A stretch of DNA of 53,531 nucleotides, from positions 1 through 53,531 of the forward strand of contig NW_021833867.1 in NCBI RefSeq assembly GCF_006345805.1, given 5' to 3'. The DNA is from Octopus sinensis (taxonomy: Eukaryota). Position 1 is the first letter of the stretch. Each line of letters starts with the position of its first letter. Below, one piece after another: positions 50,131-53,531 of the stretch. A program made the translations under genes and the position numbers. The notes under the pieces are model-generated. The model had not been told where the DNA came from. It ran no database searches and was given only the letters and a program-made list of their open reading frames with translations.

Positions 50131-51477
50131 ATGCGCTATAGCATCGCAAAAAAGACTCGGAAGCCTTGCGTGTGTCTACGACTTGCTAAAGATGTTTAGT
50201 GAGACGGAGAAACGTCCGGATGTAGCACCGTTCTGCTTATATCACTGATATTCTGTGAAGTGTTTCGTGTTATTTTGATAATTCATATATTTTAATTATG
50301 ATCTTTGAGTAGCCTCCCGTCTCAAACTTTAGATGAAATTTCGATTACGTTAAATTGGTCTGCCTTTCGCATCAATGATGATAGTAATCACAGACAGTAC
50401 ATGTAAGTTACATATTACGTGTTATGTATGTGTTTGCATGTGTGCGTGTGTGTGTACTTGTATATACATATATATATATATATATATATATATATATATA
50501 TATACCTATGTGTGACCTATGGTAGACTAGCTTAATTTAATTTAATTAAGCTGGTCTATCATTAAAGACACTGAAACGATGCATCGTATAAAAGATGAAT
50601 TAGGGTAAATGTTTTTAAATTTTCACCTTATTTCCGAATTACACTACTTGGCGGTTGGAGTTATGGCTGCTCTTTCTGGTGGACGAATGGCCTGTTTAGG
50701 CCATTCCTAAATTGTTATATTTATACATATTTAGTCTTTGACTATTTTCTCTTTTCCATTAGGCCGCTGGTAGCGATAAATTTTTACTGAATTTTTTGCT
50801 ACCCTAAATTGATTAATATATATATATATATATATAATATCCCGGAAACAGCTGTATACACTCGAAAGCAAAAATACGAAAATGTAAACGAATATTTACA
50901 CAATTGAACGAGCTACCAGAAAAGTACTAATTACACTAATCAGGTTTTCCGATTTGATGAAGTCCTCATCTGTATTGACTATATAAATAATTCGTCAGTG
51001 GTTCGACGGAAGAGAAATACTCGAGTCCCATATACATGGAGAATAATAATATTAATACTTTTAACACTGAATATAAAACAATAGCAGGTAGAGGATGTGT
51101 GTGTGTATGTGGGCATGTGGGCGTGGTGTGTTCATGTAAGTTTGAGTGTGAGTGTGTGTATGTGTGTAGAAAGATAGCTATATAGATATAGCTATACTCA
51201 TACATATGTACATACATGCATACATTCATACATCCGTATAGATTTGACAGGAAAAAAAAACAAGATAAACAGTAATCAATGCTTGAGAATATATATATAA
51301 TTTTTTTTTCCTTCTTTCTTCAAATTTTCGTCCATTTCTCGCCGAGTGTTTTCCGTACACCTAGGGCAGAGAAGCTCATTGTATGCAAATTATCATTATT
51401 ATTATTATTATTATTATTATTATTATTATTATTATTATTATTATTATTATTATTATTATTATTATCATCATCATCAT

Positions 51478-51620
51478 AGACGTCACACAGTCTATATCGT
51501 AAGCTTGTTGATTGAAGATGTATCTACCGGGTGTTTGTATTGATTGTCAAGTCACAACATGGACAGCACATTACACAATAACCGTGCAGTTTCAAGTAGT
51601 GCCGACGTTTTCAATACTAT
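51478..51620 (-). mobile_element. R4/Dong-like LINE 3' fragment D4
   Basis: IVLKTSALLETARLLCNVLSML* (stop at 51552), bracketed by (TAA)n and (TGA)n/(TAA)n. Confidence 0.6.
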
Positions 51621-51720
51621 TATAATTATTATTATTATTATCATTGTTGTTATTATTATTATTATTATTATTATTATTATTATTATTATTATTATTATTA
51701 TTATTATTATTATCATTATT

Positions 51721-51899
51721 TTCTCTTTATCGCAGGTTTTGTTGGAGCTCCTGGAGTCTTGCATGCCTAGCGGGTTTACTACCTGCAGACTACGGTACTG
51801 TGCTATTCGTTCTTTTCAGCCATCCTGATTGTTCTGTCCGTGCCAAGGAGGCAAACCATTTGTAACGGTTCTACTAGACACTCTATTCCAATTTCCTGG
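51721..51899 (-). mobile_element. R4/Dong-like LINE 3' fragment D3
   Basis: QEIGIECLVEPLQMVCLLGTDRTIRMAEKNE* (stop at 51803), then a short 3' UTR and (TAA)n. Confidence 0.62.
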
Positions 51900-52231
51900 A
51901 TTTTGCTTTGTATTTGTACACGGTCGACTTGAAGTCTCACCTAGAGACCTCAAGAGACAACAATTTAGAAGTTCAAATTTGATGCTATGACTAGGGTGCC
52001 ATATTTTTGGTTTTGCACAGAATATTATTCTAGAGGATATCTGTGAAAACAAGACAATTAGAAATTTCTTTTAAAATAATTTGATTATAAGATGATTGTG
52101 TGACAGTAATGGGTGTTTGCTGTTATGTACATTTGAAAGTACTTTTTGCAATGTTTACTGATAAAAAAAAAGGTTGGGGATTACTTGGACAATATTTTAC
52201 GTAGGATATGAGCAGTTCCCATGAACACAAT
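51900..52231 (-). mobile_element. R4/Dong-like LINE 3' fragment D2
   Basis: IVFMGTAHILRKILSK* (stop at 52181) lies immediately after (TAA)n and is followed by a 3' UTR of about 280 bp. Confidence 0.7.
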
Positions 52232-52271
52232 TATTATTATTATTATTATTATTATTATTATTATTATTATT

Positions 52272-52620
52272 GCCTTTGCACAGATTCTAACGCTGGAGAT
52301 GTATTACAATGTCAGCTGTTCACTACCAGTGAACTAAGGTAACGCCTCTCATTTTTCGAGCACCTTCCGGAGTATTCGAGCGGTTCCAAGCAGTGTTGTT
52401 TTCTGCAAGTGCTCCAGCCTTATTGCAGCCACTATTTGTTTCACGTACTTCTCGAGATCTTTGCTCACTATTCCCAGGGCTCCGATAATTATTGCTACTA
52501 CTGCTACCTTTTTCACCGACCAAAAATGTTTAACTTCCCAAGCTAACCTGTCATATCCTTCGACTTTTTTCTTTATCGCATACCTTGACAGCTGGGCATG
52601 CTATACCTATGATCCAGCAA
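52272..52620 (-). mobile_element. R4/Dong-like LINE 3' fragment D1 (restriction-like endonuclease C-terminus), embedded in (TAA)n
   Basis: Translation WIIGIACPAVKVCDKEK/VEGYDRLAWEVKHFWSVKKVAVAIIIGALGIVSKDLEKYVKQIVAAIRLEHLQKTTLLGTARILRKVLEK* (stop at 52349), a short 3' UTR, and (TAA)n on both sides. Confidence 0.85.
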
Positions 52621-53531
52621 AGTTTGTTATTGTTATTACCATTATTATTATTATTATTATTATTATTATTATTATTATTATTATTATTATTATTATTATT
52701 ATTATTATTATTATTATTATTATTATTATTATTATTATTATTATTATTATTATTATTATTATTATTATTTTTATTATTATTATCATTATTAACAGAAGTG
52801 ACCTAAGAAATGAGAGTTTCGTACATAGCGCTTTAAAAATACTGATGAGTACTCTCTGCGCGAAACTCTTAAGCCTTAGGTCAGTTTTGTAACATTCTGC
52901 TGATTAGACATATGCATACACACTCATACGCGCGTACATACACACACACACACACACACACACACACACACACACAGACACACACACACACACACACACA
53001 CACCACACACACACACACACACACAAAGAGAGAGTGGGAGCTTGATAAGTGCATGCATAGATACACGCATACACACAAGCACACGGTAAAGGACACGGCA
53101 TCAACACCCATATGCATTAACATGTTATACAAAACAGATATATGCTTCCAGACTCACCATGCTTATATTTCTCTCGCTCTGTTTCATTCTGCACTTGTTT
53201 ACCGGCTGCTATATGTCAGTTACGTCTGTCATATCAAACTGCATCGTGCATTCAACAACGTGTGACGCTGTTACATGTCTCTATGTGTCTGTGTGTCAGT
53301 ACATCTATACATTTTGTCTATGTACAATATAGGTTGTAAAATTTTTCACGTGTAGGTACTTAACCGCAGGTCAGTTCTGACTCGCTATAATCATCTGCTT
53401 CTTAACTCCAGAAAGTGTTTGTAACTTTATCGTAATTAATGTTCAGTGCCATGGTAATTGTCGTAGTTCATGCTACGGCTTGTTGTTTTCTCCATCTTTT
53501 TCTTCTTCTTCTTCTTCTTCTTCTTCTTTCT

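What the first reader, a model, noticed from the sequence alone, without database searches (positions are those of the whole stretch)
51393..52790. Microsatellite landing pad: four different R4/Dong-like 3' ends stacked in one orientation inside (TAA)n arrays
Seen: four minus-strand fragments each end in a variant of the same C-terminal peptide (LQKTTLLGTARILRKVLEK*, IVFMGTAHILRKILSK*, LQMVCLLGTDRTIRMAEKNE*, LKTSALLETARLLCNVLSML*). Each has a different 3' UTR, and (TAA)n lies at every boundary except D2/D3. D1 also keeps the restriction-like endonuclease segment (IIGIACP..K..K..Y). Established: Dong elements of the R4 clade target (TAA)n repeats. Inference: at least four diverged lineages repeatedly inserted into the same array, each leaving a TAA tail that is the target for the next. 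That would be a self-renewing, strand-specific insertion trap that also generates the microsatellite.
Basis: partly seen in the sequence, partly recalled or inferred. Interest (0 to 1): 0.78.

Follow-up and report, generated by a model that had tools for sequence, protein, structure and literature searches.

The report
Stacked Dong-like retrotransposon ends in TAA-repeats
Four dead, front-truncated tail pieces of different Dong-like (TAA-repeat-seeking) retrotransposons sit head-to-tail in one TAA microsatellite; this is real, but it is the expected footprint of a known kind of site-specific mobile element.

Summary
On the minus strand of 51389-52791, four fragments each end in the same conserved C-terminal helix (LLGTARILRKVL-like), then a stop codon and an unrelated 3'UTR. 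(TAA)n arrays separate them everywhere except between D2 and D3.

A profile of the C-terminal domain ranks D1, D3, D4 and D2 among the six best matches in all six frames of the 53.5-kb window. Sixty shuffled windows gave nothing comparable.

Full-length relatives are about 1,100 aa, with RT, a CCHC motif and a C-terminal restriction-like endonuclease homologous to that of R2. They have no APE domain.

Across 87 related loci plus the window, 59 such ends are followed within 350 nt by a sense-strand (TAA)n array and 1 by an antisense array. One full-length copy has (TAA)n directly on both sides. Neighbouring ends outside the window are co-oriented 13:1.

This is the published behaviour of Dong (R4 clade), which is already reported in octopus repeat libraries.

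I could not test RT-phylogenetic placement in R4, the order of insertion, or whether the elements create the microsatellite.

Side finding: the D1 lineage has a covarying two-helix 3'UTR element.

Verdict: correct reading, ordinary biology, modest interest.

The parts
52642..52791 (-). (TAA)n array a, about 50 units with a few variants. It lies upstream (in element sense) of D1 and is either the remaining target array or the tail of an element further upstream.
   Evidence: TRF (52627-52791, 93% matches). The boundary with D1 was set from the alignment.
52272..52641 (-). D1: a 5'-truncated Dong-like copy. The coding remnant (52641-52349) covers the distal half of the restriction-like endonuclease domain and the C-terminal helix. 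It carries one frameshift and has the catalytic Asp replaced by Gly. The complete 77-nt 3'UTR runs 52348-52272.
   Evidence: HMM 98.9-104.9 bits. Protein hits at 63-74% identity. About 73% DNA identity, 3'UTR included, to copies in L001 and L082-L084.
52308..52344 (-). Conserved 3'UTR two-helix element of the D1 lineage. The inner hairpin is GTTCAC-TGGTA-GTGAAC at 52334-52318. The outer helix is GTTA/TGAC.
   Evidence: 97.7% of cells paired, and 7 of 10 pairs show changes on both sides. The outer helix was not used to select the sequences.
52230..52271 (-). (TAA)14 array b, 100% pure. It is the tail of D1 and/or the remaining target.
   Evidence: TRF.
52181..52229 (-). D2 coding remnant: the last 16 codons (IVFMGTAHILRKILSK) plus the stop, starting directly at the array edge.
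   Evidence: The best neighbour is P0142, '...IALMGTAHILRKVLS'.
51917..52180 (-). D2 3'UTR, followed by an unassigned stretch up to the first detectable D3 homology. The D2/D3 junction lies somewhere in here. The candidate tail remnant AATAATA is at 52029-52023.
   Evidence: Sequence. The D3 upstream extension is not supported. Family 3'UTRs are mostly 50-175 nt.
51721..51916 (-). D3: the C-terminal roughly 37 codons (…IQEIGIECLVEPLQMVCLLGTDRTIRMAEKNE), stop at 51805-51803, and an 82-nt 3'UTR (51802-51721).
   Evidence: HMM 7.6-17.9 bits. The best neighbours are P0082 and P0113, 'EIGVTCHLESLQRACLLGTAR'.
51618..51720 (-). (TAA)n array d, about 34 units at 92% purity.
   Evidence: TRF.
51477..51617 (-). 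D4: the last ~20 codons (…VLKTSALLETARLLCNVLSML), stop at 51554-51552, and a ~75-nt 3'UTR.
   Evidence: HMM 3.0-8.6 bits. No shuffle reached this score. The best neighbour is P0069, 'IMQKTALLGTARLLRKVLSL'. This is the weakest of the four.
51389..51476 (-). (TGA)4(TAA)n array e, about 26 units at 97% purity. It is the tail of D4 and/or the distal remainder of the target. Unique flank follows.
   Evidence: TRF; sequence.

Best explanation
The 1.4-kb block is a (TAA)n microsatellite that was hit at least four times by Dong-like non-LTR retrotransposons. These elements encode a reverse transcriptase and a C-terminal restriction-like endonuclease. They belong functionally, and most likely phylogenetically, to the Dong lineage of the R4 clade.

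Inferred mechanism, from established R2/R4 biology: the endonuclease nicks one particular strand of the TAA/TTA duplex. The freed 3' end primes reverse transcription at the element RNA's 3'UTR and (UAA)n tail. Synthesis usually aborts early. This leaves a 5'-truncated copy whose sense strand is always the TAA strand and whose 3' end runs into (TAA)n.

Because the target is strand-asymmetric, all insertions in one array are co-oriented. Because each copy ends in TAA repeats, the array survives insertion and can be hit again.

The four copies come from four different sublineages, with different peptides and unrelated 3'UTRs. All four are dead. D1 is the best preserved and probably the youngest.

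Shown: the identity of the domain, the family architecture, the TAA association and orientation bias, and the independence of the four ends.

Inferred: the cleavage and priming mechanism, sequential insertion and its order, and any contribution to array growth.
For: - Peptides, stops and arrays confirmed.
- In the profile scan of the whole window, all four fragments are among the six best hits, and 60 shuffles gave at most 0.3 bits.
- The family has 17,618 representative proteins. All 12 full-length members examined carry RVT_1 plus a zf-RVT-like CCHC motif, with no endonuclease/exonuclease/phosphatase domain and no N-terminal zinc finger.
- The RT is closest to solved R2 proteins (E 4.5e-32, against 1e-15 for L1 ORF2p).
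- The C-terminal profile aligns with the R2 RLE: KPD...D...K..KY, E 1.6e-5.
- 59 ends are followed by sense (TAA)>=4 within 350 nt and 1 by an antisense array.
- Full-length copy L087 7294-10527 has (TAA)n directly on both sides. Several 5'-truncated copies start within 0-60 nt of a sense TAA array.
- Co-oriented stacks occur in 10 other loci, 13:1. L082 holds at least 7 ends in 16 kb.
- The four fragments share no DNA similarity and have different nearest subfamilies.
- The D1 coding part and 3'UTR are collinear with family copies up to the tail.
- Literature: Dong targets (TAA)n in insects, molluscs and cnidarians (PMC7998251; PMC3812793). A full-length Dong is in the Octopus bimaculoides repeat library, and LINE/Dong-R4 hits occur in O. 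vulgaris transcripts (PMC9115989).
Against: - No reference Dong, R4 or HERO sequence was reachable, so R4-clade placement rests on architecture and target, not phylogeny. Some HERO families also target microsatellites (PMC4640811).
- D2 and D4 are very short (16-20 codons) and their scores are low in absolute terms.
- No long TAA array separates D2 from D3.
- 32 of 92 family ends with enough flanking sequence lack a TAA array within 350 nt, so not every sublineage or copy fits.
- Rfam found no HDV-like ribozyme at the 5' ends of two full-length relatives, although Dong and R4 are reported to have one (PMC3774820).
- Arrays next to Dong ends in this window (42-165 nt) are no longer than Dong-free TAA arrays elsewhere in it (42-357 nt). 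So nothing here shows that the elements enlarge the microsatellite.
Confidence: 0.78

Rival explanations
1. Single-event origin. One target-primed reverse transcription event produced the stack. The RT aborted on one Dong RNA and jumped to the 3' (UAA)n tail of another Dong-lineage RNA, several times, giving a co-oriented head-to-tail chimera in one integration.
For: Template jumping between RNA ends is an established in-vitro property of the related R2 RT (my own knowledge, not tested here). All copies are extremely 5'-truncated. The D2/D3 junction has little or no TAA linker. Similar near-linkerless junctions occur in L082 (2141/2167) and L084.
Against: The four copies look unequally decayed: D1 has one frameshift in about 95 codons, while sequence upstream of D3 is unrecognisable. 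Array purities differ, from 100% to 92%. A single event would need four different lineages to be co-expressed. Linkers of 14-55 units are easily explained by insertion into an existing array.
Confidence: 0.12
2. Local duplication or rearrangement. One ancestral 3' end plus its TAA tail was tandemly duplicated or rearranged, for example by unequal crossing-over in the microsatellite, and the copies then diverged.
For: The co-oriented tandem layout with microsatellite linkers is what unequal exchange would produce.
Against: There is no detectable DNA similarity among the four units or their 3'UTRs, yet their coding ends are still recognisable. Each resembles a different extant subfamily. All four contain the same ORF segment, so they are not pieces of one copy.
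Confidence: 0.02
3. Only D1, and perhaps D3, is a real element fragment. D2 and D4 are chance resemblances in AT-rich sequence next to arrays.
For: D2 and D4 score only 2.8-3.0 bits in the whole-window scan and 8.5-8.6 bits locally. No multi-copy relatives of their UTRs were found.
Against: No hit of 2.8 bits or more occurred in 60 shuffled windows or in the reversed window. Both fragments lie on the same strand. Both align to the same terminal profile positions. Both are followed within 2-3 codons by a stop, and D4 is followed after ~75 nt by a sense TAA array. Specific neighbours exist at 65-80% identity.
Confidence: 0.05
4. The mechanism is the same but the clade is different. The family is a TAA-targeting lineage of another RLE clade (HERO, or an unnamed one) rather than Dong/R4.
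For: Clade placement was not tested. HERO includes microsatellite-specific families (PMC4640811). No HDV-like ribozyme was detected.
Against: The target, tail, size (about 3.6-3.8 kb), single ORF, lack of N-terminal zinc fingers, and host range (lepidopterans, crustaceans, molluscs, and marine or host-associated metagenomes) match published Dong. RepeatMasker labels octopus transcripts LINE/Dong-R4, including the C-terminal region of R4-1_AC.
Confidence: 0.15

Closest known systems
Dong (Bombyx mori; DongAg, DongBg), the (TAA)n-specific lineage of the R4 clade of non-LTR retrotransposons
   Same: Single ORF with RT and a C-terminal restriction-like endonuclease. Insertion inside (TAA)n in a fixed orientation. 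The 3' end runs into (TAA)n. Frequent 5' truncation. Occurrence in molluscs (PMC7998251, PMC3812793).
   Different: Phylogenetic grouping with reference Dong was not tested. No HDV-like 5' ribozyme was found by Rfam in two full-length relatives. The window holds only dead 3' fragments from four sublineages.
R2 (28S rDNA-specific RLE element; solved structures 9nl2, 9nl3, 9dou, 8gh6)
   Same: The RT is the closest solved relative. The C-terminal domain aligns with the R2 RLE motifs. The element probably uses the same target-primed reverse transcription with 3'UTR recognition.
   Different: The target is a microsatellite, not 28S rDNA. There are no N-terminal zinc-finger or Myb hits in Pfam. The 3' end has a TAA-repeat tail.
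Tandem or nested pile-ups of other site-specific retrotransposons: Utopia in U2 genes (PMC4640811); from my own knowledge, TRAS/SART in Bombyx telomeric repeats and Zepp clusters in Chlorella
   Same: A repetitive target is hit repeatedly, giving co-oriented, 5'-truncated head-to-tail stacks. The target motif is regenerated at each 3' end.
   Different: The target motif and element clade differ. Here several sublineages share one small interstitial array.
HERO clade families with microsatellite targets
   Same: RLE-type architecture and microsatellite specificity (PMC4640811).
   Different: Most HERO families are non-specific. I could not make a sequence comparison.

Membership tests
RLE-type non-LTR retrotransposons (R2 group: R2, R4/Dong, NeSL, HERO) | Single ORF with a central reverse-transcriptase domain | tested here: met
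   RVT_1 in 12 of 12 full-length family members. The window copies themselves are truncated downstream of the RT.
RLE-type non-LTR retrotransposons (R2 group: R2, R4/Dong, NeSL, HERO) | CCHC motif followed by a C-terminal PD-(D/E)XK restriction-like endonuclease, with no N-terminal APE domain | tested here: met
   CRxC...H...C is invariant in A2. zf-RVT is present in 12 of 12 members and no Exo_endo_phos domain is found. Profile A1 aligns RPD/IDIA/EK..KY with the KPD/VDV/EK..KY of the R2 RLE, E 1.6e-5. D1 keeps only the distal half, with Asp changed to Gly.
Dong (TAA-specific lineage of the R4 clade) | Insertion inside (TAA)n, with the repeat on both sides of the element | tested here: met
   L087 full-length copy: (TAA)28 | element | 76-nt UTR | (TAA)34. 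5'-truncated copies abut sense arrays in L082, L083, L085 and L086. In the window, D1 and D4 have arrays on both sides, while D2 has one only upstream and D3 only downstream.
Dong (TAA-specific lineage of the R4 clade) | Fixed orientation: the element sense strand is the TAA strand, and the 3'UTR is followed directly by (TAA)n | tested here: met
   59 sense against 1 antisense array within 350 nt of the ORF end. 3'UTRs are mostly 50-175 nt.
Dong (TAA-specific lineage of the R4 clade) | RT phylogeny groups the family with Bombyx Dong and Ascaris R4 rather than R2, NeSL, HERO or CRE | not testable with these tools
   No labelled Dong, R4 or HERO sequence is available. Named hits are only 'uncharacterized protein' from Penaeus, Papilio, Arctia and Nucella. 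The transcripts labelled LINE/Dong-R4 in PMC9115989 are not in the stored part of the FASTA.
Dong (TAA-specific lineage of the R4 clade) | No N-terminal zinc fingers, only a highly diverged Myb/SANT-like region (PMC7998251) | tested here: inconclusive
   No N-terminal Pfam hit in 12 of 12 members at E<=5, which is consistent. A conserved W-rich N-terminal block exists, but I did not test it for a Myb fold.
Dong (TAA-specific lineage of the R4 clade) | HDV-like self-cleaving ribozyme at the 5' end (PMC3774820) | tested here: inconclusive
   Rfam E-value scans of the 5' junctions of L087 and L082 found no ribozyme family. Such ribozymes are often missed by covariance models. The window copies lack 5' ends.

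The most novel reading that the evidence does not exclude
Dong-like elements may do more than use TAA arrays. They may seed and maintain them in a positive-feedback loop, so that insertions pile up in a few 'landing pads' shared by several competing sublineages. In this window the tally is four hits in one locus and none in five other TAA arrays. L082 has at least seven ends in 16 kb. If this holds genome-wide, these elements would account for part of the (TAA)n microsatellite load of cephalopod genomes. A related possibility is that some stacks are made in one step by RT template jumping between RNAs of different lineages.
Probability: 0.25. Interest if true: 0.45.

Novelty: new member of a known kind. 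Interest (0 to 1): 0.3.

Why it matters
The block is a clean textbook example of how a strand-specific, microsatellite-targeting retrotransposon leaves co-oriented, 5'-truncated stacks. It shows that at least four Dong-like sublineages were active in this genome.

Practical uses are correct repeat annotation, since such blocks can be mistaken for genes or for a single element, and markers for dating insertions.

No new principle is involved. Dong's TAA specificity, its presence in octopus, and pile-ups of site-specific elements in repetitive targets are all published.

The covarying 3'UTR stem-loop found along the way may be the more useful lead. It is a candidate RT-recognition element for this family.

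Tried and rejected
- Pfam on the four peptides gave no hits; the C-terminal domain has no Pfam model.
- Exact look-up of the window's own 55-aa ORF found nothing on record. The source contig is therefore not in the collection, and neither orthologous nor genome-wide analysis of the source species was possible.
- BLASTN of D1-D4 against the window and the related loci found relatives only for D1. The family consensus for D2-D4 could not be built.
- I tried to extend D3 upstream through a frameshift to the AATAATA at 52029-52023. It looked plausible by eye against P0082, but the HMM score did not rise (16.5 against 17.9 bits), so I rejected it.
- I tried to obtain a sequence labelled Dong/R4 by several routes. 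A profile search with 12 full-length members returned no informative names. The RepeatMasker table of PMC9115989 names Dong-R4 transcripts, but their sequences are not in the stored part of the supplement. PMC309301 (the original Dong paper) is not held. A text search for the peptide motif found no papers.
- Rfam scans for a 5' HDV-like ribozyme in L087 and L082 gave only spurious A-rich matches to CrcZ.
- I looked for Dong 3'UTR remnants or the hairpin next to the five other TAA arrays of the window and found none.
- Folding the four 3'UTRs one at a time showed no unusual stability. Only the comparative analysis revealed the D1-lineage element.
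Full report
**Observation**

Translating the minus strand of 51380-52830 reproduces the four quoted peptides exactly. Each is followed by a stop codon: D1 at 52351-52349, D2 at 52183-52181, D3 at 51805-51803 and D4 at 51554-51552. Tandem Repeats Finder reports TTA-class arrays on the + strand (TAA in element sense) at 51389-51465, 51618-51720, 52230-52271 and 52627-52791. 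In element sense the layout is:

(TAA)~50 – D1 – (TAA)14 – D2 – [no long array] – D3 – (TAA)~34 – D4 – (TGA)4(TAA)~26 – unique flank.

**Is it more than chance?**

D1 finds 67 short ORF products at E down to 2e-29. A profile of these finds 17,618 representative proteins at E<=0.001.

I built an HMM from 192 family C-termini and ran it over all six frames of the 53.5-kb window, with stops read as X. The six best hits were:
- D1, 98.9 bits
- D3, 7.6 bits
- the upstream frame of D1, 6.7 bits
- an unrelated fragment at +18170-18250, 4.2 bits
- D4, 3.0 bits
- D2, 2.8 bits

The next hit scored -0.5. Sixty dinucleotide-preserving shuffles of the window never exceeded 0.3 bits, and the reversed window gave -3.6. 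All four fragments align to the same terminal profile positions, the '...LQKtaLLGTARILRKVL' helix. All four are on one strand. D1, D3 and D4 are each followed by a short 3'UTR and then a sense TAA array. D2 and D4 are short, but the conjunction makes chance very unlikely.

**What the domain is**

Twelve full-length relatives of about 1,050-1,150 aa all carry a central RVT_1 domain and a zf-RVT-like CCHC motif (CRxC..ETxxH....C, invariant). The domain in question sits at their extreme C-terminus. None has an apurinic-endonuclease domain or an N-terminal zinc finger.

The closest solved proteins are R2 retrotransposon proteins (E 4.5e-32, against about 1e-15 for LINE-1 ORF2p). The C-terminal profile alone aligns with the restriction-like endonuclease of R2. 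RRPDIVVV, IIDIAVP and EKExEKxEKYQxL match YKPDLIFV, VVDVTV and AAEKVRKYKHL, at E 1.6e-5.

It is only the distal half, though. The Asp of IIDIA is Gly, and a 5-nt deletion shifts the frame.

**Target and orientation**

I fetched 80 loci from metagenome contigs and 7 loci of about 16-20 kb from large ENA assemblies.
- Across these and the window, 59 family ORF ends are followed within 350 nt by a sense-strand (TAA)>=4 array, and 1 by an antisense array.
- 32 have none, and 20 run off the contig.
- 3'UTRs are mostly 50-175 nt.
- L087 holds a full-length copy with (TAA)~28 immediately upstream of its first base and (TAA)~34 after a 76-nt 3'UTR.
- Several 5'-truncated copies begin within 0-60 nt of a sense array.

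This is the published signature of Dong. [quoted passage not shown] A full-length Dong is in the Octopus bimaculoides repeat library (PMC9115989), and RepeatMasker labels O. vulgaris transcripts LINE/Dong-R4.

**Four lineages or one copy?**

The four fragments cannot be pieces of one copy, because each contains the same terminal ORF segment with its own stop. They share no DNA similarity. Their best peptide matches are to different family members:
- D2 to P0142 ('IALMGTAHILRKVLS')
- D3 to P0082 and P0113 ('EIGVTCHLESLQRACLLGTAR')
- D4 to P0069 ('IMQKTALLGTARLLRKVLSL')
- D1 to a lineage that is about 73% identical at the DNA level through the coding part and the whole 3'UTR up to the tail

That alignment also places the D1 5' end at about 52641, inside what TRF counts as array.

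**Is stacking general?**

Yes. Outside the window, 14 pairs of neighbouring ends lie within 3 kb of each other, in 10 loci. Thirteen pairs are co-oriented (one-sided binomial p about 9e-4). L082 carries at least seven co-oriented ends and one intact 1,145-aa ORF in 16 kb, with every TAA array in sense. Linkers range from long arrays to 3-4 units (L084) or none (L082 2141/2167). The linker-poor D2/D3 junction is therefore not unusual.

**Mechanism (inferred)**

By analogy with R2/R4 target-primed reverse transcription, the endonuclease nicks a defined strand of the TAA/TTA duplex. The (UAA)n tail and 3'UTR of the RNA position the RT, and cDNA synthesis often aborts. Strand asymmetry of the target makes co-orientation automatic. 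The TAA tail of each copy keeps the site targetable.

D1 looks youngest. It has one frameshift and is followed by a 100% pure array. Sequence upstream of D3's last ~37 codons is unrecognisable.

A one-event origin by serial template jumping cannot be excluded. Nothing here shows that the elements lengthen the microsatellite. TAA arrays without Dong ends elsewhere in the window are as long or longer.

**What remains untested**

- Placement in the R4 clade by RT phylogeny. No labelled reference could be obtained, and some HERO families also target microsatellites.
- The 5' HDV-like ribozyme reported for Dong and R4 (PMC3774820). Rfam did not detect it in two full-length relatives, which is inconclusive.
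- The source species and its orthologous loci. They could not be examined, because the window's contig is not in the look-up collection.

**Side finding**

In 24 of 59 family 3'UTRs (17 distinct versions), a 6-bp stem with a [T/G]GGNN pentaloop lies shortly after the stop. Shuffles give 0.26 of 59, and the antisense strand gives 0.

In a 13-sequence alignment that includes D1, an outer 4-bp helix that was not used for selection is 94% paired, with compensatory changes at 3 of its 4 pairs. Overall 97.7% of cells are paired, and 7 of 10 pairs change on both sides. No shuffle or slid register comes close.

D1 carries the element at 52344-52308. D2-D4 do not, which agrees with their being different sublineages.

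**Verdict**

The biology is that of a known family behaving as expected. Novelty is 'new member of a known kind', and interest is modest.

Noticed in passing
window 52308-52344 (minus); L005, L020, L031, L036, L042, L048, L049, L059, L078, L082:~2545, L083:~10230, L087:~10470: A conserved two-helix 3'UTR element in the D1-type lineages. The inner part is a 6-bp stem with a [T/G]GGNN pentaloop, and the outer helix is 4 bp. Both covary strongly. It is present in 24 of 59 family 3'UTRs, against 0.26 expected. It is a candidate RT-recognition signal.
   Followed up: yes
window 18149-18470 (+): A fifth RLE-type C-terminal remnant from a different lineage (…VKIPVIVGPLGMIKIETEKYLRMIP…). It is split at about 18258-18405 by a SINE-like insert and resumes as …MQEVQKIVLRRVCSL*. 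No TAA array follows it, so it probably comes from a lineage that does not target TAA.
   Followed up: partly
window 36447-38438 (-): An open 664-aa reading frame with an RVT_1 domain (E 1e-21). It belongs to another retroelement unrelated to the stack and shows only generic RT similarity to the Dong-like family.
   Followed up: partly
window 2170-2652 and 25341-25794: Two short tandem arrays of about 2.5 units of 183-184 bp, in opposite orientation to each other. The same SINE-like unit interrupts the fragment at 18258-18405.
   Followed up: no
window 6120-6365 (+): The (AAT)n array at 6241-6365 is directly preceded by sequence resembling the 3' part of the same SINE-like unit (…ggatgaaacataaaac…gaactcagaatgg). 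I did not check whether a SINE subfamily carries a TAA tail and so might be mobilised by Dong-like elements.
   Followed up: no
L082 1-16000 (ENA ERZ25066847 ctg1205); L087 7210-10629 (ENA ERZ25073769): L082 is a dense co-oriented pile of at least 7 Dong-like ends, plus one intact 1,145-aa ORF (10650-14087). L087 holds a near-intact full-length copy (one frameshift) with (TAA)n abutting both ends.
   Followed up: yes
loci L004, L013, L014, L017-L019, L021-L023 and others: About a third of the family ORF ends with enough downstream sequence (32 of 92) have no (TAA)>=4 within 350 nt. Some sublineages may use other tails or targets.
   Followed up: no
window 3915-3995, 6241-6365, 7788-7844, 22949-22990, 46969-47325: Five other TAA-class arrays in the window (one TTA-sense, four TAA-sense on the + strand) carry no detectable Dong coding end, known 3'UTR or hairpin. 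All four recognisable hits in the window are in one locus.
   Followed up: partly
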